Positions 15,923 to 64,000 of a stretch of 64,000 nucleotides of DNA are shown one piece after another. Source of the DNA: Phaeosaccion multiseriatum (Eukaryota; Protista; Ochrophyta, other classes); contig OZ218958.1 of assembly GCA_965112735.1 (NCBI GenBank), positions 868,001 through 932,000 on the forward strand, given 5' to 3'. Position numbers and translations under genes: made by a program. Numbering within the stretch: position 1 is the first letter of the stretch; every line of letters begins with the position of its first letter. Below the pieces are notes generated by a model. That model saw only the letters and a list, made by a program, of their open reading frames with translations. It searched no databases and was not told the DNA's origin.

Positions 15923-17415
15923 ATGAAACAAGAGGGAGAGAGTAGAACGAGAGGAGAGAAGAGCAAAGGGTGCAAGAGAAGCAAGGAGGTGCGCGAGGAA
16001 TGGTGTCCGGAAAGCGATTTGTACCCAGCTCAGGCGAGCGGGAACGAGGATACCTCCGACGCGACTCGAGTGTTGCACATCGTCCGGAAGACTGTGGGTC
16101 CCGTTCAGGCTCTCTGGGGGCTGTCTACATCCATTGACAGGTGCTTGAATCGTGCCATCCCATGCGTGGATGCTCAGTTTTCATGCGCTGCCTTTCCCTC
16201 CGTGTGCACGATACTTATTCCGCATCCTTTGCTCTGCCTCCTCTCCTTGCAAAGGCTCACACCCAGAAGGGCGGTCCTTCATCGGTTCGTGCCCTCCAAC
16301 GTCAGACATAGCCTCATGCGCATGCTAGGCATCACCACAACAATGACGGAGTGGGGTTGGAGCGAAGGCCGTGCAGGAGATGACGAGGTGGACTGGCGGC
16401 AGTGGGAAGACGGGCAGATTCCACTCAGCCCGGAGAACGAGGACAAGGAGGAGGAGGACGGAGAGGAGGAGGCAGAGGAAGGGGACGAAGCCGAGAGGGC
16501 CAAGCAGAATGGACAGTACGACGAAGAGCAGGTGCCCTTCCCCATTCCAGCCGTGCGCATCGGAGCCACCGACGAAGAGGTTCAAGAGCACTCCTGCTCG
16601 CTCTCTGAAGTGGAGCCTGGTAGAGAGGAAGAACCTCTCTCGGCCACTGCGGCCTCTCTGGACCTCCTCGCCACGCTGCCTCGCACGGTTACGAGTGTCA
16701 CACTCGTCGGAGCGGCCTGCAGCAGCAGATGGGCGCCCCTTATCACCCCACGGTGGCTGAAGAAGCTCACTCTGGGCTCGTCGTTCGATCAGCCACACCA
16801 TCCTCTGATGCTGCCCGACTCGCTCGAGGAGCTGGTGTTCGCCGAAGACTGTGTGTTCGACGGCCCCCTGGCGCTGCCTTCCTCGCTCAAGAAGGTCACA
16901 TTTGGCTCTCGATTCAATCAGGCTGAGCTGGAGCTGCCAATTGGGTTGGAAGAGCTAGAGTTTGGCTGGTCCTACAACCACAGTATTGACTGCCTCCCCT
17001 CGACATTGCGCAGGCTTGTGCTGGGCCACGACTTTGATCGAGACGTGAGCCTGCCGCCCTCGCTGGAGGTGGTTGAATTCGGCTATTGCTTCAATAGCAA
17101 CATCACCTTTATCGCCTCACAGCAGCAGCAAACAGACGGTGGCGCTCATGATGGCATTGAGATCAAGAGGGAGGAGGAGCAGGAGCATGGTGCGAGGAAG
17201 AGTAGCTGCAGCAGCAGCAGCAGCTACGGCAGTCCTGACACGAGCAGTAGGTTGCAGAGCATGACGTTCGGAGACGTGTTCTCCCGTGCCCTGCCAACCA
17301 TCCCTGCGTCTGTGAAGCGCCTTGATTTCGGTGCTAGCTTCGACATGCTTCATCTTACTCCATTGCCAACGGCTCTGAGAGAGCTGCGACTGCGCTGCCC
17401 CCGCCTCGGCGCAAT

Positions 17416-17452
<37 letters not shown>

Positions 17453-18019
17453 GAGCAAGAGCAGAGTCCGGAAGAGTACGAGCATCAGCAGGAACACGAG
17501 CAAGGGCAGCACGACGAGCACGACGGCGACTACGCCCCTGCTGCCTCTTGCACTGCTGCCAATGGAGGAAGGAACACCACCCTCCCCACGCCCACCAACA
17601 CCCTCACATATCTGAGCCTCCCACCGCAGCTGACAACGCTCCACCTTCGCACCACAAGCAGCACCCGCCTGGGCCCCCTCGACCTCCCCTCTACGCTGAA
17701 GGAGCTATGGCTCGTGGGTGGGCCCTACACACACCCCCTTGTGCTTCCTTCCTCTCTAGAGAAGCTCCGTCTCTGTGAGTACTCCCTTCCCCTACGCTTG
17801 CCCGCCTCGCTCCGTGAGTTATGGTGGCTAAGTGGGACAGGCTGTCACTCGCCACCGCCTCGCGTGAAGCTTCCCCGAGGCATCGAGTTGGTTGTGTGCA
17901 TGTTGCCCACTGTGAGGCTCTTGACTTTGCCCCTCGGGGTCAAGGAGTGGCAGCGAAGCAGGGGTAGGGGCAGCTTAGTCCATGTTACTTTCCAGCGCCC
18001 CCCGCGGGGTCGGGCTTGA
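15923..18019 (+). CDS. FNIP (LRR-like) repeat protein, divergent paralogue with one probable intron (16141-16254)
   Basis: Repeats such as LPDSLEELVFAEDCVFDGPLALPSSLKKVTFGSRFNQAELELPIGLEELEFGWSYNHSI. Removing GACAG|GTGCTT...TTGCAAAG|G gives VLHIV...LWGLSTSIDRLTPRRAVLHRFVP, which aligns with VLDTV...LWGVSRALDEVTSRTLVLNSAVP in the FNIP genes at 53.6 and 59 kb. Confidence 0.85.
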
Positions 18020-53496: not shown

Positions 53497-53650
53497 CACG
53501 ATCTTCTGTACCGCATCAAAGGCATGGCACCTACCGTGTGAATCGTGGAGCACCAAAACGCCCGCAGCCGGGTTTTTTCCACCAGACTTACCTCTTGCTC
53601 TTTTGTACCGCGGCGCTAGGTGGCTCTCAGCAAGAGGACTGGGAAGAGCA

Positions 53651-55942
53651 ATGAAGCGCCGCGCTCAGGAGTGCCGGCAGCAGGGAGAGGCGGGAGAGGC
53701 GGGGAGGATGATATCTCACAGTCCCCGGCAGCAGAGCGCCGCTGGTTCCTCTACTGCGTGCACCGTCCAAGCTGGGGACAGCAGGAGCCAGACTGTAGCG
53801 GCCTGGGGTGTTCTTGATACCGTACTGCGGAGCAAGGAACTTTGGGGTGTCAGCCGGGCCCTCGATGAGGTGACATCACGCACTCTCGTGCTGAATTCTG
53901 CTGTACCCGCCCCTGTCCAACAGCATATGCTCGGTCTCCTCCGGTGGCAGCAGCGGGAAGAGGAGAAGCACACTCGTGCATCACCATCTCTAGCGGCAGA
54001 GGTGGGGGCCGTTGGCAGTGGAGAGGGAGAGGGAGGCCTGGGGGGAGGCAAACCGAGACGCACGTTCGGCATTGCAGCTGTGCGCCTGGGCCCCAGCAGG
54101 AGCTACTTTCATGGTCTCGATCTGGCCTCCGCTGACGAAGCTCTGGTCGCGAAGGCGTTGGCGCTATTGTCGGCATCGGTCAAGCGTGTGTGCTTCTCGG
54201 ACCATTTCAACCAAGGTAACATCACGTTACCAAGAACCGTGGAGGAGGTGCAGATGGGGGGGGCCTTCAATCTCCCTTTGGATCTCCCCGCCTCGCTGAA
54301 GAAGATCACATTTGGCGAAAGGTTCAATCAGCACGTGGTCCTTCCTTGCGGTGTGGAGGAGGTGGCGATGGGGCGTGACTTCAACCTCCCTTTGGACCTG
54401 CCTGCTTCGCTGAAGAAGATCACATTGAGCGGAAGGTTCAATCAGCACGTGGTCCTTCCTTGCGGTGTGGAGGAGGTGGCGATGGGGCGGGACTTTAACC
54501 TCCCTGTGGACCTGCCTGCCTCGCTGAAGAAGATCAGATTTAGCGATTGCTTCAATCAGCACGTGGTCCTTCCTTGCGGTGTGGAGGAGGTGGACATGGG
54601 GTGGGACTTCAACCTCCCTCTGGCCCTGCCTACTTCGGTGAAGAAGATCAGTTTTGGCGGACTATTCTATCAGCACTTGGTCTTTCCTTGCGGTGTGGAG
54701 GAGGTGGTGATGGGTTGGGTTTTTAACCTCCCTGTGGACCTACCTGCTTCGCTGAAGAAGATCAAATTTGGTCTTGACTTCAAGCAGCATGTGGTCCTTC
54801 CTTGCGGTGTGGAGGAGGTGGAGATGGGTAGGGACTTTAACCTCCCTCTTGAGCTGCCCGCTTCGCTGAAGAAGATCACATTTGGCGCAAGGTTCAGTCA
54901 GCACGTGGTCCTTCCTTGCGGTGTGGAGGAGGTGGACATGGGGTGGGACTTTAACCTCCCTCTGGCCCTGCCTACTTCGCTGAAGAAGATCACATTTGGC
55001 GAAAGGTTCAATCAGCACGTGGTCCTTCCTTACGGTGTGGAGGAGGTGGCGATGAGGCGGGACTTTAACCTCCCCCTGGCCCTGCCTGCTTCGCTGACGA
55101 AGATCACATTTAGCGAAAGGTTCAATCAGCACGTGGTCCTTCCTTGCGGTGTGGAGGAGGTGGAGATGGGGCATGACTTTAACCTTCCTTTGGCCCTGCC
55201 TGCTTCGCTGAAGAAGATCAGATTTGGCGGAAGATTCAATCAGCACGTGGTCCTTCCTTGCGGTGTGAAGGAGGTGCATATGGGGCGTGACTTTCACCTC
55301 CCTCTGGCCCTACCTGCCTCGCTGAAGAAGATCACATTTTGCATGAACTCGCGATTCAATCAGCACGTGGTCCTTCCTTGTGGTGTGGAGGAGGTGGACA
55401 TGGATTGTGACTTTAACCTCCCTTTGGCCCTGCCTGCTTCGCTGAAGAAGATCAGATTTGGCAGGAACTCGAAGTTCAATCAGCACATGGTCCTTCCTTG
55501 TGGTGTGGAGGAGGTGGAAATGGGTTGTGACTTTAACCTCCCTTTGGCCCTGCCTGCCTCGCTGAAGAAGATCAGATTTGGCGGACTATTCAATCAGCAC
55601 GTGGTCCTTCCTTGCGGTGTGGAGGAGGTGGAAATGGGTTGTGACTTTAACCTCCCTTTGGAGCTGCCTGCCACGCTAAAGAAGATCACATTTGCCGAAT
55701 GCTCGCACTTCAATCAGCACGTGGTCCTTCCTTGTGGTGTGGAGGAGGTGCAGATGGGTAGGGACTTTAACCTCCCTCTGGCCCTGCCTGCTTCGCTCCA
55801 GAGTCTATGGTTGGGAAGGAACTACACTTGCCATTTGGAGCATCTGCCTGCTGGCCTGAGGGATTTTACGGTTGGGCGGGGATGTCCTCTGCCTGCAGAT
55901 CGTCCCGAGGGGCTTCTGGTCAAGTACCATGGCTCTTTATGA
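53651..55942 (+). CDS. Intronless FNIP/LRR-like repeat protein, copy A (13 near-identical 38/40-aa repeats at 54284-55783)
   Basis: Repeat consensus LPASLKKIxFxxxFNQHVVLPCGVEEVxMGxDFNLPLx; the array is 1500 nt = 10x114 + 3x120. Likely ATG at 53651 (MKRRAQE). The ORF-track extension to 53324 overlaps the opposite-strand C2 gene. Confidence 0.9.
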   Translation: MKRRAQECRQQGEAGEAGRMISHSPRQQSAAGSSTACTVQAGDSRSQTVAAWGVLDTVLRSKELWGVSRALDEVTSRTLVLNSAVPAPVQQHMLGLLRWQQREEEKHTRASPSLAAEVGAVGSGEGEGGLGGGKPRRTFGIAAVRLGPSRSYFHGLDLASADEALVAKALALLSASVKRVCFSDHFNQGNITLPRTVEEVQMGGAFNLPLDLPASLKKITFGERFNQHVVLPCGVEEVAMGRDFNLPLDLPASLKKITLSGRFNQHVVLPCGVEEVAMGRDFNLPVDLPASLKKIRFSDCFNQHVVLPCGVEEVDMGWDFNLPLALPTSVKKISFGGLFYQHLVFPCGVEEVVMGWVFNLPVDLPASLKKIKFGLDFKQHVVLPCGVEEVEMGRDFNLPLELPASLKKITFGARFSQHVVLPCGVEEVDMGWDFNLPLALPTSLKKITFGERFNQHVVLPYGVEEVAMRRDFNLPLALPASLTKITFSERFNQHVVLPCGVEEVEMGHDFNLPLALPASLKKIRFGGRFNQHVVLPCGVKEVHMGRDFHLPLALPASLKKITFCMNSRFNQHVVLPCGVEEVDMDCDFNLPLALPASLKKIRFGRNSKFNQHMVLPCGVEEVEMGCDFNLPLALPASLKKIRFGGLFNQHVVLPCGVEEVEMGCDFNLPLELPATLKKITFAECSHFNQHVVLPCGVEEVQMGRDFNLPLALPASLQSLWLGRNYTCHLEHLPAGLRDFTVGRGCPLPADRPEGLLVKYHGSL

Positions 55943-55958
55943 TGATGATGAATGGCGG

Positions 55959-55991
<33 letters not shown>

Positions 55992-56308
55992 GGAGGAGGA
56001 GGAGGAGGAGGAAGAAGAAGAAGAAGAAGAAGAAGAAGAAGAAGAAGAAGAAGAAGAAGAAGAAGAAGAAGAGGAGGAGGAGGAGGAGGAGAACGATAAT
56101 GTCTATGTCTAGGAGGTGTCTATGTCTAGGAGACGTGCCTGGAGGAGGTGCAGCTCGCTCCATGAGAATACAACGCATGAAACAAAGCCACTGTCAGGGG
56201 CAGGGTCAGGGGCAGAGTCAGGGGACGACGACTGACGAGAGTGAGGCGCGGACCGAGGCGGAGACGTGGGGGAGAGGGGGCGGGAGGTAACGGGGAGAGG
56301 CAGCACTG

Positions 56309-58053
56309 ATGAGGTTCCTCATCCTCACCCTCGTACCGCTTTGGCCCCTCGGAGGAGGAGCAGAGGAGGAGAAGGGTGTGGACGGACAGGGACAGAGAGC
56401 CCAAGGTGAGCAGAGCCCCCTCCCCGCCCTTCGACTTACGTGCCAGCTTCCACGGTCTGCGACCACAGCAGAATCCATCAAGCATCTACTACAAATGTTT
56501 CGTGTTGCAGGACTCTCCTGTAGCTTGCTTTGACCTCTCTACTCTCCAACACCGCTGCCCTCTCCACCTACAGTAGCAGCAGCATAAGCATCAACAGCAG
56601 CAGCAGCAGCAGCAGCAGGGAAGACTTCTTGCGGATGACTTCAGTGCTGTCTGATACGCTCGTGGGGGAGCAGTACGGTGTGGGAACCGTAGACGACGAG
56701 ATCGGTCTCACCAGGTGAGGCAGTCGGCTTCTGGCCGTCCTCTCTCTCCCTCTCACCCGTACTTTGTTTCCATCTGTCTCCTCTCTCCCTCGCTCCCTCC
56801 GTTTCTGACCCCCCCCCCTCTGTCTCTCCATCTACATCTCTCTCTGACGGTTTAAGCTTTCGTTGTGTCTCTCCCTCCCTCTGTCTCACCCTCTGTACCC
56901 CTTTCTCTCCCTCCCTCCCTCCCTCCCTCCCTCCCTCCCTCCCTCCCTCCCTCTCTCCCTCCCTCTCTCCTTGTCTCCCTCCCTCCCTCCCTCCCTCCCT
57001 CTCTTCCATGCCGCAGGCCTGTCAAGACCACCCCCCTGAGCCTTGTTCCCTTGGTGGTAATGGTGGAGGGCGTCCTCACTGGGGCAGAGTGTGCGGAGAT
57101 TGTCAGCATCGGTAAATCGAAGGTGGAAGCTTCCCACGTAATGGGGAAGGCAGGGTCAAAGTCGAGGTGAGCCGATGCTGCTCCCTGCTCCAGCAGGGGG
57201 GTATGCATATGGTGGGAAAGAAGGGGTGCGTGAGTGCGTGTGTGTGTGTACGTATGTATATATGTGTATATGTGTGTTTGGGTGTATGTGGCCGCCATGC
57301 TCTGCTGTCATGCTCGTGGTGGTGGTTCTCTTCCCGCGCGTTGGGATGCAGTGCGTATTACCACAGAGAGCAGCAGCTCTGGAGGACCACCTTGTGCTGA
57401 CTTGTCTTGCTAAGCGTCTCTCTCTCTCCCCCTCTTCTCTCTCTCTCTTTCTCTGTCTCTTCCCCTCTCCCTCCCTCTCCCTCTCTCTCTGCTCTGTCCT
57501 TCATCATCTGTTGGTGTGTAATCGCAGAGTGAGTGAGAGTGCGTTCCTACCGTATGGGGTGGGAGGAGACAAGTCCATTCTCCGCACCCATCGAGACCGA
57601 ATCGAGAACATCTTGGCGTTTCGGCCAGAGTAAGTAATCCCCCTTTCGGCGCCATCATCACTCTCCACCTCCTTGTCCTGCCCTCCTCCGCCCCCCTTGT
57701 GGTAGCTCCGACCACCCTCACACCGGATATCCACGCACACAACACACCAATATTAGCCCCCCACCCACTGCCATCCATCCATTGCCATCCCCCTCCCTCC
57801 AGGAGCCGTCTTCTCGGCGGGCTGCTAGGACGTGCAGCTTGTGCATTACGAAGAAGGAGGCCGCTTCGACGTACACCACGACTCCACAGCCTTCCACCCC
57901 CGCTACCTCACCGCCCTGGCCTATCTCAACGACGTGCCCGGAGAGGGAGGCGGGATGTGGTTTCCGGTTGCCAATGGAGGGGAAGCTGTCGATACCGGTG
58001 ATGGTGGTCAGGAATGTGAGGAAGGGGGTGAGGGAGGGGGCCAACAAGAAGGT

Positions 58054-58092
<39 letters not shown>

Positions 58093-58308
58093 GGAGTAGA
58101 AGCAAGACGAGGCGAAGGCGGCGTGATTGTGACGCCCAAGCTGGGATCGATGGTGGTGTTTTTCAATCACAAGCCTACTGGGGGTGGGGGTGTGGATGGC
58201 AGTGGAGGGGTTGATGCCGTGTTGGACGCTTCGGCTGTGCATGCAGGTTTGCCCCTCGCCGCCGGACAGAGCAAATGGGTCATGAATCTGTGGTGGAAGC
58301 CCCCTTGA
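56309..58308 (+). pseudogene. Prolyl 4-hydroxylase (2OG-Fe(II) dioxygenase), copy A, disrupted; 5' end uncertain
   Basis: Exons encode LSLVPLVVMVEGVLTGAECAEIV, RVSESAFL, VQLVHYEEGGRFDVHHD (HxD), RYLTALAYLNDVPGEGGG, VIVTPKLGSMVVFFN, AVHAGLPLAAGQSKW (distal His, 2OG-binding Lys). Relative to copy B it has an extra C at ~57806 and GAG>TAG at 57826-57828. Confidence 0.8.
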
Positions 58309-59047
58309 TGCTGGAGGATGATGCCGTTGATGATGCGGTGATGGTGATGGTGATGGTGATGACGATGACGGGCGGACCCACGCCACACACACAAGCACAC
58401 GCCAAATACTATAGACAACAGTGGAGTCTTTTTCGTCCTCAACACAGAGGTCCGTGCGAGCAACGACCTTCTCGATCATGTACCGGGACGTGTCAGAGGG
58501 ATGGAGGGCCAGTGTCCGGTTTCAGTGTCCTGTTTGTCCTGTTCTCGGTCGGGTTCATCCATCCTCTCTGAGCGAGGCCACAGCGGCAGACTCTGAGCTG
58601 CAGTTGAAGGCGACATGACACCTCCTTCGCTGCTGCTCTTACTGCTCCCACTGCGTCGGTTACCGCTCCTCTTGCTACAGAGCAAACAGAGCATTGGAAT
58701 GAAAAGAGAGTGGGGGGGGGGGGGGGGTATGAAGTGCCATCCATGGTTTGCCTAAAAGTAACAACAGCCCTTGTGTCGAATCGAACGTTCGTACCGGGCT
58801 CACTCTGGAGCGCCACTGTGGGAGGAAGGGCACCGACCGTGTGAATCGTGGAGGACCAACACGCCCGCAGGCCGAAGGAGCTGACTTCCTCTCTTGCTCT
58901 CTTGTACGGCGGCGCTGGGTGGCTCTCAGCACCGCGGCCCCCACCCTGTGTTCCCCTCTTTCCCCAAAGCTTAGAGGACTGGGAAGAGCAATGAAATGCC
59001 GCATTCAGGAGTGCCGGCAGTAGGGAGAGGCGGGAGAGGCGGGGAGG

Positions 59048-61168
59048 ATGATATCTCACAGTCCCCAGCAGCAGGGCGCCGCTGGTCCCTCTACTGCGTG
59101 CACCGTCCAAGTTGGGGACAGCAGGAGCCAGACTGTAGCGGCCTGGGGTGTTCTCGATACCGTACTGCAGATCAAGGAACTTTGGGGTGTCAGCCGGGCC
59201 CTCGACGAGGTGACATCACGCACTCTCGTGCTGAATTCCGTTGTGCCCGCCCCTGTCCTACAGCATATGCTCGGTCTCCTCCGGTGGCAGCAGCGGGAAG
59301 AGGAGAAGCACACTCGTGCATCACCACCTCTAGCGGCAGAGGTGGGGGCCGTTGGCAGCGGAGAGGGAGAGGGAGGCCTGGGGGGAGGCAAACCGAGACG
59401 CACGTTCGGCGTTGCAGCTGTGCGCCTGGGCCCCAGCAGGAGCTACTTTCATGCTCTGGATCTGGCCTCTGATGGCGAAGCTCTGGTCACGAAGGCGTTG
59501 GCGCTATTGCCGGCATCGGTCAAGCGTGTGTGCTTCTCGGACGATTTCAACCAAACGAACATCGCATTACCAAGAACCGTGGAGGAGGTGCAGATGGGGC
59601 GGGACTTCAATCTCCCTTTGGATCTCCCCGCTTCGCTGAAGAAGATCACATTTGGCTGGAGGTTCAATCAGCACGTGGTCCTTCCTTGCGGTGTGGAAGA
59701 GGTGCACATGGGGTGGGACTTTAGCCTCCCTGTGGAGCTGCCTGCCTCACTGAAGAAGATCACATTTGGCGATTGCTTCAATCAGCACGTGGTCCTTCCT
59801 TGCGGTGTGGAGGAGGTGCACATGGGGTGTGACTTCAACCTCCCTCTGGCCCTACCTGCCTCGCTGAAGAAGATCACATTTGGCGGAAGATTCAATCAGC
59901 ACGTTCTCCTTCCTTGCGGTGTGGAGGAGGTGCACATGGGGTGTGACTTCAACCTCCCTTTGGAGCTGCCTGCCTCGCTGAAGAAGATCAGCTTTAGCGG
60001 AAGCTTCAATCAGCACGTGGTCCTTCCTTGTGGTGTGGAGGAGGTGGAAATGGGGTGTGACTTTAACCTCCCTCTGGATCTCCCCGTTTCGCTGAAGAAG
60101 ATCGCATTTAGCATAAGGTTCAATCAGCACGTGGTCCTTCCTTGCGGTGTGGAGGAGGTGCACATGGGGTGTGGCTTCAACCTCCCTTTGGAGCTGCCTG
60201 CCTCGCTGAAGAAGATCACATTTGGCGATTGCTTCAATCAGCACGTGGTCCTTCCTTACGGTGTGGAGGAGGTGCGCATGGGTAGGCACTTTAACCTCCC
60301 TTTGGAGCTGCCTGCCTCGCTGCAGAAGATCACATTTAGCAAAGGGTTCAATCAGCACGTGGTCCTTCCTTGCGGTGTGGAGGAGGTGCAGATGGGGTGG
60401 GACTTTAACCTTCCTTTGGCCCTGCCTGCTTCGCTGAAGAAGATCAGATTTGGCGGAAGATTCAATCAGCACGTGGTCCTTCCTTGCGGTGTGAAGGAGG
60501 TGCATATGGGGCGTGACTTTCACCTCCCTCTGGCCCTACCTGCCTCGCTGAAGAAGATCACATTTGGCATGAACTCGCGATTCAATCAGCACGTGGTCCT
60601 TCCTTGCGGTGTGGAGGAGGTGGACATGGGTTGTGACTTTAACCTCCCTTTGGCCCTGCCTGCTTCGCTGAAGAAGATCACATTTGGCAGGAACTCGAAG
60701 TTCAATCAGCACGTGGTCCTTCCTGGTGGTGTGGAGGAGGTGGAAATGGGTTGTGACTTTAACCTCCCTTTGGCCCTGCCTGCCTCGCTGAAGAAGATCA
60801 GATTTGGCGGACTATTCAATCAGCACGTGGTCCTTCCTTGCGGTGTGGAGGAGGTGGAAATGGGTTGTGACTTTAACCTCCCTTTGGAGCTGCCTGCCAC
60901 GCTAAAGAAGATCACATTTGCCGAATGCTCGCACTTCAATCAGCACGTGGTCCTTCCTTGTGGTGTGGAGGAGGTGCAGATGGGTAGGGACTTTAACCTC
61001 CCTCTGGCCCTGCCTGCTTCGCTCCAGAGTCTATGGTTGGGAAGGAACTACACTTGCCATTTGGAGCATCTGCCTGCTGGCCTGAGGGATCTTACGGTTG
61101 GGCGGGGATGTCCTCTGCCTGCAGATCGTCCCGAGGGGCGTCTGGTCAAGTACCATGGCCCATTATGA
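59048..61168 (+). CDS. Intronless FNIP/LRR-like repeat protein, copy B (12 repeats at 59624-61009)
   Basis: The array is 1386 nt = 9x114 + 3x120. The ATG homologous to copy A (58991) is followed by CAG>TAG at 59021-59023, so the open frame begins at M59048. Confidence 0.85.
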   Translation: MISHSPQQQGAAGPSTACTVQVGDSRSQTVAAWGVLDTVLQIKELWGVSRALDEVTSRTLVLNSVVPAPVLQHMLGLLRWQQREEEKHTRASPPLAAEVGAVGSGEGEGGLGGGKPRRTFGVAAVRLGPSRSYFHALDLASDGEALVTKALALLPASVKRVCFSDDFNQTNIALPRTVEEVQMGRDFNLPLDLPASLKKITFGWRFNQHVVLPCGVEEVHMGWDFSLPVELPASLKKITFGDCFNQHVVLPCGVEEVHMGCDFNLPLALPASLKKITFGGRFNQHVLLPCGVEEVHMGCDFNLPLELPASLKKISFSGSFNQHVVLPCGVEEVEMGCDFNLPLDLPVSLKKIAFSIRFNQHVVLPCGVEEVHMGCGFNLPLELPASLKKITFGDCFNQHVVLPYGVEEVRMGRHFNLPLELPASLQKITFSKGFNQHVVLPCGVEEVQMGWDFNLPLALPASLKKIRFGGRFNQHVVLPCGVKEVHMGRDFHLPLALPASLKKITFGMNSRFNQHVVLPCGVEEVDMGCDFNLPLALPASLKKITFGRNSKFNQHVVLPGGVEEVEMGCDFNLPLALPASLKKIRFGGLFNQHVVLPCGVEEVEMGCDFNLPLELPATLKKITFAECSHFNQHVVLPCGVEEVQMGRDFNLPLALPASLQSLWLGRNYTCHLEHLPAGLRDLTVGRGCPLPADRPEGRLVKYHGPL

Positions 61169-61526
61169 TGATGCTGATGAGGATGAATGACGATGATGAT
61201 GATGATGATGATGATGATGAGGAGGAGGAGGAGGAGGAGGAAGAAGAAGAAGAAGAGGAGGAGGAGGAGGAGGAGGAGGAGGAGGAGGAGGAGAACGATG
61301 AGGAAGAGGAGGAGGAGGATGATGAAGATGGCGATGTCTATGTCTAGGAGACGTGCCTGGAGGAGGTGCAGCTCGCTCCATGAGAATACAACGCATGAAA
61401 CAAAGCCACTGTCAGGGGCAGGGTCAGGGGCAGAGTCAGGGGACGACGACTGACGAGAGTGAGGCGCGGACCGAGGCGGAGACGTGGGGGAGAGGGGGCG
61501 GGAGGTAACGGGGGGAGGCAGCACTG

Positions 61527-63499
61527 ATGAGGTTCCTCATCCTCACCCTCGTACCGCTTTGGCCCCTCGGAGGAGGAGCGGAGGAGGAGAAGGGTCTGGA
61601 AGGACAGGGACAGAGAGCCCAAGGTGAGCAGAGCCCCCTCCCCGCCCTTCGACTTACGTGCCAGCTTCCACGGTCTGCGACCACAGCAGAATCCATCAAG
61701 CATCTACTACAAATGTTTCGTTTGCAGGACTCTCCTGTAGCTTGCTTTAACCTCTCTACTCTCCAACACCGCTGCCCTCTCCACCTACAGTAGCAGCAGC
61801 ATAAGCATCAACAGCAGCAGCAGCAGCAGCAGCAGCAGGGAAGACTTCTTGCGGATGACTTCAGTGCTGTCTGATATGCTCGTGGGGGAGCAGTACGGTT
61901 TGGGAACCGTAGACGACGAGATCGGTCTCACCAGGTGAGGCAGTCGGCTTCTGGCCGTCCTCTCTCTCCCTCTCACCCGTACTTTGTTTCCATCTGTCTC
62001 CTCTCTCCCTCGCTCCCTCCGTTTCTGACCCCCCCCCCTCTGTCTCTCCATCTACATCTCTCTCTGACGGTTTAAGCTTTCGTTGTGTCTCTCCCTCCCT
62101 CTGTCTCACCCTCTGTACCCCTTTCTCTCCCTCCCTCCCTCCCTCCCTCCCTCCCTCCCTCCCTCTCTCCCTCCCTCCCTCCCTCCCTCCCTCCCTCTCT
62201 TCCATGCCGCAGGCCTGTCAAGACCACCCCCCTGAGCCTTGTTCCCTTGGTGGTAATGGTGGAGGGCGTCCTCACTGGGGCAGAGTGTGCGGAGATTGTC
62301 AGCATCGGTAAATCGAAGGTGGAAGCTTCCCACGTAATGGGGAAGGCAGGGTCAAAGTCGAGGTGAGCCGATGCTGCTCCCTGCTCCAGCAGGGGGGTAT
62401 GCATATGGTGGGAAAGAAGGGGTGCGTGAGTGCGTGTGTGTGTGTACGTATGTATATATGTGTATATGTGTGTTTGGGTGCATGTGGCGGCCATGCTCTG
62501 CTGTCATGCTCGTGGTGGTGTTTCTCTTCCCGCGCGTTGGGATGCAGTGCGTATTACCAGAGAGAGCAGCAGCTCTGGAGGACCACCTTGTGCTGACTTG
62601 TCTTGCTAAGCGTCTCTCTCTCTCTCCCTCTTGTCTCTCTCTCTCTTTCTCTGTCTCTCCCCCTCTCCCTCCCTCTCCCTCTCTCTCTGCTCTGTCCTTC
62701 ATCACATATTGGTGCGTAATCACAGAGTGAGTGAGTGAGAGTGCGTTCCTACCATATGGGGTGGGAGGAGACAAGTCCATTCTCCGCACCTTTCGAGACG
62801 GAATGGAGAACATCTTGGCGTTTCGGCCAGAGTAAGTAATCCCCCTTTCGTCGCCATCATCACTCTCCACCTCCTTGTCCTGCCCCCCCCCGCCCCCCTT
62901 GTGGTAGCTCCGACCACCCTCACACGGGATATCCACGCACACAACACACCAATGTTAGCCCCCCACTCACTGCCATCCATCCATTGCCATCTCCCTCCCT
63001 CCAGGAGCGTCTTCTCGGCGGGCTGCGAGGACGTGCAGCTTGTGCGCTACGAAGAAGGAGGCCGCTTCGACATACACCACGACTCCACAGCCTTCCACCC
63101 CCGCTACCTCACCGCCCTGGCCTATCTCAACGACGTGCCCGGAGAGGGAGGCGGGACGTGGTTTCCGCTTGCCAATGGAGGGGAAGCTGTCGATACCGGT
63201 GATGGTGGTCAGGAATGTGAGGAAGGGGGGAGGGAGGGGGCCAACGAGAAGGTGCAGCAGCAGCAGCAGCAGCAGCAGCAGCGGGAGTAGTAGCAAGACG
63301 AGGCGAAGGCGGCGTGATTGTGACGCCCAAGTTGGGATCGGTGGTGGTGTTTTTCAATCACAAGCCCACTGGGGGTGGGGGTGTGGATGGCAGTGGAGGG
63401 GCTGATGCCGTGTTGGACGCTTCGGCTGTGCACGCAGGTTTTCCCCTCGCCGCCGGACAGAGCAAATGGGTCATGAATCTGTGGTGGAAGCCCCCTTGA
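61527..63499 (+). pseudogene. Prolyl 4-hydroxylase, copy B (frameshifted as assembled, possibly intact in vivo); 5' end uncertain
   Basis: GCEDVQLVRYEEGGRFDIHHD is intact. It has an extra GTGA at the exon acceptor (~62726-62740) and one base fewer than copy A in the G run at 63225-63230, which shifts AVHAGFPLAAGQSKW out of frame. Confidence 0.7.
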
Positions 63500-64000
63500 T
63501 GCTGGAGGATGATGCCGTTGATGATGCGGTGATGGTGATGGTGATGACGATGACGGGCGGACCACACACCACACACCAACACACGCCGAATACTGTAGAC
63601 CGCAACAAGGTTGTGGAGTCTTTTTTGTCCTCAACACAGAGTTCCGTGCGAGCAGCGACCTTCTCGATCATGTACCGAGATGTGTCAGAGGGATGGAGGG
63701 CCAGTGTCCGGTTTCAGTGTCCTGTTTGTCCAGTTCTCCGTCGGGTTCATCCTCTCTGATCGAGGCCACAGCGGCAGACTCTGAGCTGCAGTTGAAGGCG
63801 ACATGACACCTCCTTAGCTGCTGCTCCTACTGCTCCTACTGGGTCGGTTACCGCGCCTCTTGCTACTAGAGAAAACAGAGCCTTTGGGTAAATATTTATC
63901 CCTAGGAGAGAGAGAGAGATTGGGGGGGGGGCGGAGGTCTTGAAGTGCCATCCATGGTTTGCCTAAAAGTAACATCTCACCCTTGTGTCGAATCGAGGGT

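What the first reader, a model, noticed from the sequence alone, without database searches (positions are those of the whole stretch)
54284..61009. FNIP repeat arrays with an invariant framework and hypervariable surface positions: candidate diversifying receptor system (VLR/TALE-like logic)
Seen: 25 repeats of 114 nt (6 of them 120 nt) share the framework LPASLKKI-x-F-xxx-FNQHVVLPCGVEEV-x-MG-xx-FNLPL-x. Variation concentrates at position 9 (T/R/S/K/A), positions 11-13 (GER, SGR, SDC, GGL, GLD, GAR, SER, GGR, GWR, GDC, SGS, SIR, SKG, or longer GMNSR/GRNSK/AECSH), position 28 (A/D/V/E/H/Q/R) and positions 31-32 (RD/WD/WV/HD/CD/CG/RH). Established: in LxxLxLxx-type solenoids these x positions line the concave ligand-binding face, the sites diversified in lamprey VLRs and plant NLR LRRs; FNIP repeats are expanded in Dictyostelium and mimiviruses. 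Inference: this is a modular binder whose specificity is rewritten by repeat-level recombination plus diversifying selection, possibly for immunity or non-self recognition.
Basis: partly seen in the sequence, partly recalled or inferred. Interest (0 to 1): 0.9.

Follow-up and report, generated by a model that had tools for sequence, protein, structure and literature searches.

The report
Fast-evolving FNIP leucine-rich-repeat gene pair
Two neighbouring copies of a gene encode a repeat protein of a known class (FNIP/FGxxFN leucine-rich repeats). The repeats are almost identical except at five surface positions, which change faster than neutral, so this is a real diversifying binder but not a new kind of system, and nothing here shows an immune role.

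Summary
Gene A (53708-55942) has 13 canonical 38/40-aa units and gene B (59048-61168) has 12. Six of the 25 units are 120 nt long. Both genes lie in a tandem 5.2-5.3 kb cassette.

Both proteins are clear FNIP/FGxxFN leucine-rich-repeat (LRR) proteins: Pfam PF05725 E 1e-66 and 1e-70, Crov588 crystal structure E 4e-63, Foldseek E 2.5e-25.

Each 38-aa unit is two 19-residue LRR turns. The variable positions 9/28 and 12-13/31-32 are residue 5 and residues 8-9 of each turn. Huyton et al. 2022 already described these as the variable concave-face and rim positions of this class, and drew the VLR comparison.

Codon tests support diversifying selection:
- M2a versus M1a gives LRT 40.5 with omega about 4.6 at five sites.
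- A tree-free comparison gives pN(HV)/pS = 2.3, against 0.30 for the framework.

Units 4-7 differ between the paralogues at dS 0.30, against 0.06 in the flanking coding sequence. They were therefore replaced, not just mutated.

I found no sign of somatic assembly: both ORFs are complete and the window holds no donor cassettes. An immune role and an F-box remain unproven.

Earlier follow-ups in this scan reached the same reading for other FNIP clusters of this genome.

The parts
53633..58972 (+). Tandem cassette copy 1 (FNIP gene A plus a downstream prolyl-4-hydroxylase-like gene)
   Evidence: BLASTN and direct repeats: copy 1 aligns to copy 2 at offsets of 5191-5340 nt with 93-98% identity outside the arrays
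58973..63881 (+). Tandem cassette copy 2 (FNIP gene B plus a P4H-like gene). Homology runs at least to 63881.
53708..55942 (+). FNIP gene A, 744 aa counted from the Met it shares with gene B. The frame stays open upstream to 53324, but that extension is closed by a stop in copy B.
   Evidence: Pfam PF05725 E 3.6e-66
53708..54169 (+). N-terminal lineage-specific region of gene A: predicted helices, a Gly/Glu-rich linker and the N-cap
   Evidence: No Pfam hit at E<=10. No homologue among 1.84 billion representative proteins. AF2 pLDDT below 65. Weak collinear similarity to the third FNIP gene.
54170..54283 (+). Degenerate first unit A0
54284..55783 (+). Array A: 13 canonical units of 38 or 40 aa, each made of two 19-residue LRR turns
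55784..55942 (+). C-terminal cap of gene A
   Evidence: 97% nt identity to the cap of gene B.
59048..61168 (+). FNIP gene B, 706 aa, intact ORF
   Evidence: Pfam PF05725 E 1.4e-70. Crov588 E 4.1e-63. AF2 mean pLDDT 74.8, repeats 80-95. Foldseek 6nyr_A E 2.5e-25.
59507..59623 (+). Degenerate first unit B1
59624..61009 (+). Array B: 12 canonical units
61010..61168 (+). C-terminal cap of gene B
55196..55783 (+). Distal five units A9-A13, 98-100% identical to B9-B13 (60422-61009)
   Evidence: dS 0.01
54626..55081 (+). Units A4-A7, strongly diverged from the units at the same positions in B (B4-B7, 59852-60307)
   Evidence: 80-88% nt identity. dS 0.30 against 0.06 in the N-terminal coding region.
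57832..58308 (+). Last exon of the 2OG-Fe(II) oxygenase / prolyl-4-hydroxylase-like gene of cassette 1
   Evidence: Pfam PF13640 E 2.9e-10. PDB P4H-TM E 6.6e-6.
15923..18019 (+). Third, divergent FNIP gene in the window (698 aa)
   Evidence: Pfam PF05725 E 3.4e-31. 30-32% identity to B.

Best explanation
A and B are young tandem paralogues of an intronless FNIP/FGxxFN leucine-rich-repeat protein. The protein is predicted to be soluble and intracellular.

Structure. Each 38-aa unit is two 19-residue LRR turns: LxxIxFGxxFNQHVVLPxx and VxxVxMGxxFNLPLxLPxx. About 28-30 turns form a curved, possibly ring-like solenoid like Crov588.

Fixed and variable parts. The core (Leu/Ile/Val, the Phe spine, Asn) and an alternating Lys-Lys / Glu-Glu ladder on the concave sheet are fixed. 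Residue 5 of each turn (concave strand) and residues 8-9 (the xx of FGxxFN, at the rim of the concave face) vary between units and between paralogues. These positions form a long stripe that most likely binds a protein ligand.

How the variation arises. It is made in the germ line over evolutionary time in three ways:
(i) cassette duplication;
(ii) replacement or exchange of whole and half units by unequal crossing-over or gene conversion, helped by invariant DNA tracts between the variable codons;
(iii) selection favouring amino-acid change at the five positions.

Shown here: family membership, fold class, site-specific excess of non-synonymous change, and unit replacement. Inferred: ligand binding along the stripe, the intracellular location, and ring closure. 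Unknown: the ligand and the biological role.
For: Family and fold:
- Pfam FNIP scores 219 and 234 bits against a cutoff of 21.
- phmmer hits Crov588 (6nyr) at E 4e-63, with each 19-residue turn aligning to a 22-residue Crov turn minus 3 residues.
- The AF2 model has pLDDT 80-95 over the repeats and a strand every 19 residues, covering K-I-x-F and E-V-x-M.
- Foldseek's best hit is 6nyr_A, E 2.5e-25, TM 0.54-0.56. AFDB cluster hits are FNIP-repeat or unnamed proteins, with other LRR proteins lower in the list.

Position mapping:
- Huyton et al. state that residue 5 is the only variable concave-face residue, and that residues 8-9 on the rim are the most variable. These are our positions 9/28 and 12-13/31-32.

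Selection:
- M0 omega is 0.50.
- M1a lnL is -923.06 and M2a lnL is -902.82, giving LRT 40.5 and p 1.6e-9.
- omega2 is 4.6 for 16.5% of sites, with posterior above 0.99 at positions 9, 12, 13, 28 and 31.
- Tree-free: pi at first and second codon positions of HV codons is 0.454, against 0.135 at four-fold sites (p 0.005).
- pN(HV) is 0.488 against pS 0.212, a ratio of 2.3 with bootstrap range 1.98-2.65. Framework pN/pS is 0.30.

Unit turnover:
- A4-7 versus B4-7 have dS 0.30. The N-terminal coding region has dS 0.06 and A9-13 versus B9-13 have 0.01.
- 62% of biallelic site pairs fail the four-gamete test.
- The distances of the two half-units are uncorrelated (Mantel r 0.10, p 0.23). Unit pairs share exact tracts with a median length of 27 nt.

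Location: no 19-aa window reaches Kyte-Doolittle 1.6, and the N-terminus is not hydrophobic.
Against: - The units recombine, so the tree behind the M2a test is unreliable (bootstrap values as low as 7-26), and such tests are known to give false positives under recombination. The tree-free ratio avoids the tree, but its five sites were chosen from the data.
- Synonymous diversity may be lowered by concerted evolution, which would inflate the ratio.
- Part of the variation at position 31 (CGT/TGT/CAT/CGG/TGG) could come from CpG transitions.
- The N-terminal region has dN/dS about 0.8 between A and B, so some relaxation of constraint in these young duplicates cannot be excluded.
- I have no expression, population or binding data.
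Confidence: 0.75

Rival explanations
1. The proteins are substrate receptors of SCF-type ubiquitin ligases. An N-terminal F-box-like domain would dock on Skp1, and the variable FNIP stripe would select proteins for degradation, as proposed for the F-box/FNIP proteins of giant viruses. This sub-hypothesis is compatible with the best explanation.
For: - F-box plus FNIP fusions are reported for Megavirus baoshan (cited in PMC9525666).
- Language-model features of residues 20-155 are nearest to viral 'F-box and FNIP repeat' clusters (scores 0.87-0.90) and to an F-box cluster (0.84). These are leads only.
- A short helical N-terminal motif (TV...LWGxSxxxD...VP..V...MLG) is shared with the divergent third FNIP gene.
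- COI1-ASK1 appears among the fold hits at rank 36.
Against: - No F-box family (PF00646, PF12937 or other) hits the N-terminal region even at E<=10.
- phmmer against 1.84 billion representatives finds no homologue of the N-terminal 153 aa.
- AF2 gives pLDDT below 50 for this region modelled alone, so no fold test was possible.
- The canonical LP start and the terminal Trp of F-boxes are not evident.
- dN/dS is about 0.8 across the N-terminal region.
Confidence: 0.15
2. This is a dedicated immune or non-self recognition repertoire, for example against giant viruses or oomycetes. In its strong form, the arrays are rearranged somatically, as in lamprey VLRs.
For: - Diversifying selection on an LRR binding face is typical of immune receptors (established knowledge).
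- The family is large in this genome: 96 first-stage notes mention FNIP.
- Units were exchanged between the arrays.
- Huyton et al. themselves raise the VLR comparison.
Against: - Both genes are complete, uninterrupted ORFs.
- The 64-kb window holds no orphan unit cassettes outside the two arrays.
- There is no signalling domain (NB-ARC, TIR, kinase, death fold).
- There is no signal peptide or membrane anchor.
- No infection-response or read-level data could be obtained.
- Diversifying selection also occurs in non-immune binders.
Confidence: 0.12
3. This is a virus-derived or selfish repeat family with no specific host function. The surface positions are simply unconstrained, and the excess of change reflects depressed synonymous diversity under concerted evolution plus mutational hot spots.
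For: - Brown-algal FNIP genes have been linked to giant viruses (PMC4421812; PMC2373305; the 2026 bioRxiv preprint).
- The genes are intronless.
- N-terminal dN/dS is about 0.8.
- The pattern at position 31 is compatible with CpG transitions.
- A frame-broken family member is reported elsewhere in this genome (note s1-334028; I did not check it).
Against: - The framework is under strong purifying selection (omega0 0.11 for 65% of sites, framework pN/pS 0.30) and both ORFs are intact.
- pN at the HV sites is 2.3 times pS. Relaxation alone gives at most 1.
- The codons at positions 12, 13 and 28 differ by several nucleotides and are not CpG-type changes.
- The G+C content of the locus equals that of its surroundings.
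- No relatives turned up in viral contigs.
Confidence: 0.12
4. This is an assembly artefact: the arrays are mis-assembled or collapsed repeats, and the differences between units are errors.
For: Tandem 114-nt repeats are hard to assemble. The P4H-like exon of cassette 2 has a frame shift next to a homopolymer and a microsatellite.
Against: - Both arrays keep an open frame over 2.1-2.2 kb.
- The differences fall on specific codons, not at random.
- Several public runs hold 56-62% of the sampled words of the stretch.
Confidence: 0.02

Closest known systems
Crov588 / Crov539, FGxxFN (FNIP) LRR proteins of Cafeteria roenbergensis virus (PDB 6NYR, 7ZAL; Huyton et al. 2022, PMC9525666)
   Same: - LxxLxFGxxFNQ...LPxx motif.
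- Near-identical tandem turns.
- Variable residue 5 on the concave face and variable residues 8-9 on the rim.
- Sequence match E 4e-63 and best fold match.
   Different: - Turns of 19 residues instead of 22; the three residues of 'xEN' are missing.
- Strict alternation of two turn types (FGxxFNQ and MGxxFNL), giving a 38-aa super-unit.
- A Lys-Lys / Glu-Glu ladder where Crov588 has a His/Tyr ladder.
- Encoded in a cellular genome in a tandem cassette.
Expanded FNIP families of brown algae (about 104 in Ectocarpus per PMC9525666; 121 in Saccharina japonica per PMC4421812)
   Same: A large lineage-specific FNIP expansion in a stramenopile alga. The top AFDB cluster hits are uncharacterized or FNIP-repeat proteins; organism names were not shown. 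96 notes mention FNIP in this genome.
   Different: This subfamily has no relative above 31% identity among 5.8 billion proteins, and none in viral or metagenome contigs. I found no paper in the held library that combines 'FNIP repeat' with 'positive selection'.
Lamprey variable lymphocyte receptors (VLR)
   Same: An LRR solenoid whose concave-face residues are diversified on a fixed scaffold, with unit-level exchange.
   Different: From established knowledge, VLRs are assembled somatically from flanking cassettes into an incomplete germline gene, and they are secreted or GPI-anchored. Here both ORFs are complete, the window has no donor cassettes, and there is no signal peptide.
TAL effector repeats
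   Same: Near-identical tandem repeats of 34-38 aa with a hypervariable residue pair at positions 12-13.
   Different: TALE repeats are two-helix units that read DNA bases. These are beta-strand/loop LRR turns, and each unit has five variable positions in two clusters. I have no evidence of nucleic-acid binding.
F-box/FNIP and F-box/LRR substrate receptors (Megavirus baoshan and mimivirus F-box-FNIP proteins; FBXL, COI1/TIR1)
   Same: An N-terminal non-repeat region followed by an LRR-type array that would select targets.
   Different: No F-box is detectable by Pfam, phmmer or modelling.
Ectocarpus LRR-ROCO / NB-ARC-TPR candidate receptors evolving by exon shuffling (Zambounis et al. 2012, PMC3341825; PMC11378527)
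   Same: Repeat-module shuffling generates variable binders in algae of the brown-algal lineage.
   Different: In those genes each repeat is an exon and is joined to a GTPase or NB-ARC signalling domain. Here the arrays are intronless and carry no signalling domain.

Membership tests
FNIP / FGxxFN leucine-rich-repeat proteins (Pfam PF05725) | Pfam FNIP model above its gathering score | tested here: met
   219.5 and 233.6 bits against a cutoff of 21, with 11 stretches each
FNIP / FGxxFN leucine-rich-repeat proteins (Pfam PF05725) | hxxhxFGxxFN...(I/L/W)Pxx repeat motif | tested here: met
   Turn a is LKKIxFGxxFNQHVVLPCG and turn b is VEEVxMGxxFNLPLxLPAS. Turn b has Met in place of the first Phe.
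FNIP / FGxxFN leucine-rich-repeat proteins (Pfam PF05725) | Significant similarity to the solved members, and an LRR solenoid fold | tested here: met
   Crov588 E 4.1e-63 and Crov539 E 3.4e-15. AF2 strand periodicity of 19 aa. Foldseek 6nyr_A E 2.5e-25.
FNIP / FGxxFN leucine-rich-repeat proteins (Pfam PF05725) | Repeat length of 21-22 residues | tested here: not met
   The turns are 19 residues (38-aa double unit), or 21 in the six long units. I treat this as a length variant, not as an exclusion.
VLR-type somatically assembled receptors | Incomplete germline gene flanked by donor LRR cassettes | tested here: not met
   Two complete ORFs. The unit motif occurs only inside the two arrays in the 64 kb.
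VLR-type somatically assembled receptors | Array sequence differs among cells or reads of one individual | not testable with these tools
VLR-type somatically assembled receptors | Signal peptide and membrane or GPI anchor | tested here: not met
   Maximum 19-aa Kyte-Doolittle score is 1.5, and below 1.0 in the first 40 aa. This is a crude test.
TAL-effector-like repeat code | 33-35 aa two-helix repeats | tested here: not met
   DSSP of the model shows a short strand every 19 aa and no helices in the array
F-box proteins (SCF substrate receptors) | F-box domain (PF00646, PF12937 or related) at the N-terminus | tested here: not met
   No Pfam family at E<=10 on residues 21-101 of B, or on the N-terminus of the third gene
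F-box proteins (SCF substrate receptors) | Three-helix F-box fold that binds Skp1 | tested here: inconclusive
   AF2 pLDDT is 50-64 in the full model and below 50 in the N-terminal model. Atlas feature hits of 0.84-0.90 are leads only.
Site-specific diversifying selection (as in immune LRRs) | omega > 1 at a class of sites, located on the binding face | tested here: met
   M2a versus M1a LRT 40.5 with omega2 4.6. Tree-free ratio 2.3. The sites equal residue 5 and residues 8-9 of Crov588. Caveat: the units recombine.

The most novel reading that the evidence does not exclude
The FNIP arrays of this alga, about a hundred loci by the scan's notes, form a germline-encoded intracellular recognition repertoire diversified by recombination. 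Whole and half units would be swapped between arrays through the invariant DNA tracts, and selection would keep five contact residues per unit diverse. One possible use is to bind proteins of giant viruses, which themselves carry FNIP genes. That would be an LRR-based immune-like system with no NB-ARC, TIR or kinase partner.
Probability: 0.12. Interest if true: 0.7.

Novelty: new member of a known kind. Interest (0 to 1): 0.3.

Why it matters
The function of FNIP/FGxxFN proteins is unknown, although there are hundreds of copies in slime moulds, brown algae and giant viruses. This locus gives a clean, quantifiable case: two young paralogues show purifying selection on the scaffold, an excess of amino-acid change at exactly the crystallographically defined rim and concave positions, and recent replacement of internal units. 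That supports the published suggestion that these arrays are diversified binders, and it offers a compact pair of genes for finding the ligands. It does not establish a new kind of immune or somatic diversification system.

Tried and rejected
2. F-box test of the N-terminus. All of the following were negative or unusable:
   - Pfam at E<=10;
   - phmmer against 1.84 billion representatives, whose only hit was a low-complexity match;
   - AF2 of the N-terminal 230 aa, with pLDDT 47.5.
3. Close relatives elsewhere:
   - The search for homologous proteins gave at best 31% identity;
   - the exact protein is not on record;
   - viral and metagenome contig scans found none.
4. Organism placement through the P4H exon gave no hit within the length filter. 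Six long ORFs of the window gave no informative Pfam family.
5. A link between the neighbouring hydroxylase and the Skp1 hydroxylation pathway (PhyA). I rejected it because the exon resembles P4H-TM and collagen/algal-type P4H, and no PhyA or PHD entry appeared.
6. PHI-type test for distance-dependent incompatibility. It was not significant, with only 11 biallelic informative sites.
7. Literature on positive selection in FNIP repeats: none in the held library.

Full report
**Observation**

The region holds two intact ORFs on the + strand. Gene A runs from 53708 to 55942, counted from the Met it shares with B. Its frame stays open upstream to 53324, but that extension is closed by a stop in copy B. 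Gene B runs from 59048 to 61168.

Parsing the translations gives, for each gene:
- an N-terminal region of about 153 aa;
- one degenerate first unit (A0 at 54170-54283, B1 at 59507-59623);
- 13 canonical units in A (54284-55783) or 12 in B (59624-61009);
- a 53-aa C-terminal cap.

That makes 25 canonical units.

Tandem Repeats Finder reports both 114-nt arrays at 86% matches. The FN(L/Q)P-coding motif occurs 22 times in the window, all inside the arrays, against 0.05 expected by chance.

**Genomic setting**

The two genes are copies within a tandem duplication of 5.2-5.3 kb. Outside the arrays the copies are 93-98% identical. Each copy also carries a downstream 2OG-Fe(II) oxygenase / prolyl-4-hydroxylase-like gene:
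- Pfam PF13640, E 2.9e-10;
- nearest solved relative P4H-TM, E 6.6e-6.

G+C content is uniform across the locus at 55-59%. A third, divergent FNIP gene lies at 15923-18019. First-stage notes of this scan place a further FNIP array 744 nt beyond the window's end, and they mention FNIP in 96 notes on this genome. I could not check those.

**What the proteins are**

- Both proteins match Pfam FNIP (PF05725) at E 3.6e-66 and 1.4e-70.
- Protein B matches the crystal-structure protein Crov588 (6NYR) at E 4.1e-63 and Crov539 (7ZAL) at E 3.4e-15.
- In that alignment, every 19-residue stretch of B aligns with one 22-residue Crov588 turn with a 3-residue gap.
- The 38-aa unit is therefore two LRR turns: turn a is L-K-K-I-x-F-G-x-x-F-N-Q-H-V-V-L-P-C-G and turn b is V-E-E-V-x-M-G-x-x-F-N-L-P-L-x-L-P-A-S.
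- An AlphaFold2 model has mean pLDDT 74.8, and 80-95 across the array. It shows a short strand every 19 residues, covering K-I-x-F and E-V-x-M.
- Foldseek's best PDB match is 6nyr_A (E 2.5e-25, TM 0.54-0.56), followed by YopM and the ring-like TLR8/9 ectodomains.
- AlphaFold DB cluster hits are FNIP-repeat or unnamed proteins, with other LRR proteins lower in the list.
- No window of 19 residues reaches Kyte-Doolittle 1.6, and the N-terminus is not hydrophobic. By this crude test the protein is probably soluble and intracellular.

**Where the variable positions lie**

Numbering each turn from its first Leu/Val:
- positions 12-13 and 31-32 are residues 8-9, the xx of (F/M)GxxFN.

For Crov588, Huyton et al. 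[quoted passage not shown] They further propose a concave-surface binding mode, compare the family with VLRs, and mention F-box fusions in Megavirus baoshan.

Coordinates of my model were not available. The mapping therefore rests on the strand positions and on this homology.

Residue 3, which forms the His/Tyr ladder in Crov588, is an invariant Lys in turn a and an invariant Glu in turn b. Residue 2 is the same (KK and EE). This gives an alternating charged ladder on the concave sheet, which I infer from the sequence.

**Selection**

Pairwise Nei-Gojobori counts over 20 non-redundant units give pS 0.213 and pN 0.116 overall. At positions 9, 12, 13, 28 and 31, pN is 0.34-0.64.

I wrote a codon-model likelihood script and ran it on the 22 unique units, using an IQ-TREE topology. 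The results were:

| Model | lnL | Parameters |
|---|---|---|
| M0 | -980.05 | omega 0.50 |
| M1a | -923.06 | omega0 0.09 for 71% of sites |
| M2a | -902.82 | omega0 0.11 for 65% of sites; omega2 4.6 for 16.5% |

The M2a versus M1a likelihood-ratio statistic is 40.5 (p 1.6e-9). The posterior for the omega2 class exceeds 0.99 at exactly those five positions.

The units recombine (see below) and the tree is poorly supported, so I added tree-free measures:
- Nucleotide diversity at first and second positions of the five HV codons is 0.454. It is 0.135 at four-fold sites (Mann-Whitney p 0.005) and 0.128 at all framework third positions (p 1e-4).
- pN(HV)/pS(all) is 2.3, with a bootstrap range over units of 1.98-2.65. 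Framework pN/pS is 0.30.

The codons at positions 12, 13 and 28 differ by several nucleotides. Those at position 31 (TGT, TGG, AGG, CGT, CGG, CAT) could partly reflect CpG transitions.

Three caveats apply: the units recombine, the five sites were defined from the data, and synonymous diversity may be depressed by concerted evolution.

**Unit turnover**

In the register set by the 3' end:

| Unit pair | nt identity |
|---|---|
| A9-A13 vs B9-B13 | 98-100% |
| A3 vs B3 | 96% |
| A8 vs B8 | 92% |
| A4-A7 vs B4-B7 | 80-88% |

A has one more unit than B near the 5' end.

| Compared region | dS |
|---|---|
| A4-7 vs B4-7 | 0.30 |
| N-terminal coding region | 0.06 |
| Five distal units | 0.01 |

The middle units are therefore not diverged orthologues. 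They were replaced or exchanged after the cassette duplicated. The distal block was either homogenised recently or is conserved.

Three further results are consistent with mosaic units:
- 62% of biallelic informative site pairs fail the four-gamete test.
- The distance matrices of the two half-units are uncorrelated (Mantel r 0.10, p 0.23).
- Units share exact in-register tracts with a median of 27 nt, and conserved DNA blocks lie between the two variable clusters.

**What is not supported**

- Somatic, VLR-like assembly. Both genes are complete ORFs, and the window holds no orphan unit cassettes. Read-level variation could not be tested. I worked beside those places and sent none of their letters to any search tool afterwards.
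- TALE-like logic. This is only an analogy, because the array is strand/loop LRR, not helical.
- An immune role. Pfam finds no signalling domain, and I have no expression or infection data.
- An F-box.
  - Pfam finds nothing at E<=10 on the N-terminal regions of B or of the third gene.
  - phmmer against 1.84 billion representatives finds no homologue.
  - The region models at pLDDT below 50.
  - Language-model features point to viral "F-box and FNIP" clusters at 0.84-0.90, which the tool itself rates as leads only.
  - A short motif is shared with the third gene, so a family-specific N-terminal module exists. Its nature is open.

**Relatives and novelty**

The nearest protein among 5.8 billion is 31% identical. 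The exact protein is not on record. Viral and metagenome contig scans found no relative.

FNIP expansions are known in brown algae:
- about 104 in Ectocarpus (PMC9525666);
- 121 in Saccharina (PMC4421812);
- among the largest orthogroups with putatively virus-derived domains in a 2026 preprint.

No paper in the held library combines "FNIP repeat" with "positive selection". The codon-level demonstration may therefore be new, but the idea is anticipated.

Earlier follow-ups of this scan on other FNIP clusters of the same genome reached the same verdict. My own tests agree with them.

I file this as a new member of a known kind. Its minor distinctive features are:
- 19-residue turns in an alternating a/b super-unit;
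- the Lys/Glu ladder;
- the polarised turnover along the array;
- the linkage to a P4H-like gene.

**Verdict**

This is a real diversifying FNIP/FGxxFN LRR paralogue pair that evolves by cassette duplication, unit exchange and site-specific positive selection. The ligand and the role are unknown. There is no evidence for a somatic or dedicated immune system. Interest 0.3.

Noticed in passing
window 62901-63500 (compare 57832-58308): The P4H-like last exon of cassette 2 is split between two reading frames. The N-part (VQLVRYEEGGRFDIHHDS...ECEEGG) is in the frame of 62901. The C-part (...VIVTPKLGSVVVFFNHK...WWKPP*) is in the frame of 62900. The shift lies just before the (GCA)n tract. In cassette 1 the exon is one open frame. 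This is either a pseudogenised copy or an assembly error at a G-run or microsatellite.
   Followed up: partly
window 54284-55783 and 59624-61009: The LRR turns are only 19 residues long, against 22 in Crov588 and 21 reported for Megavirus baoshan. This is at or below the shortest LRR lengths usually quoted (20-30). The six long units add two residues in the FGxxFN loop only.
   Followed up: partly
window 54284-61009, unit positions 6-7 and 25-26: There is an invariant Lys-Lys in turn a and Glu-Glu in turn b, at the solvent-facing strand positions. This predicts an alternating salt-bridge ladder along the concave sheet, where Crov588 has its His/Tyr ladder.
   Followed up: no
window 53708-54169 vs 59048-59506: The N-terminal coding region of the two paralogues has dN/dS of about 0.8 (21 non-synonymous and 9 synonymous differences). 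This suggests relaxed constraint or adaptive change outside the array.
   Followed up: partly
window 16034-16400: The third FNIP gene shares a short N-terminal motif with A and B (TV...LWGxSxxxD...VL...VP..V...MLG). It carries an insertion of about 38 aa in the middle of that motif, which may be an unspliced intron, as a first-stage note suggested.
   Followed up: partly
window 55939-56110 and 61165-61340: Directly after each FNIP stop codon lies a long (ATG)n/(GAA)n trinucleotide tract of different length in the two cassettes. The whole window is unusually rich in microsatellites (156 TRF rows).
   Followed up: no
Nothing was laid, and I did not send these letters to any search tool afterwards.
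   Followed up: no
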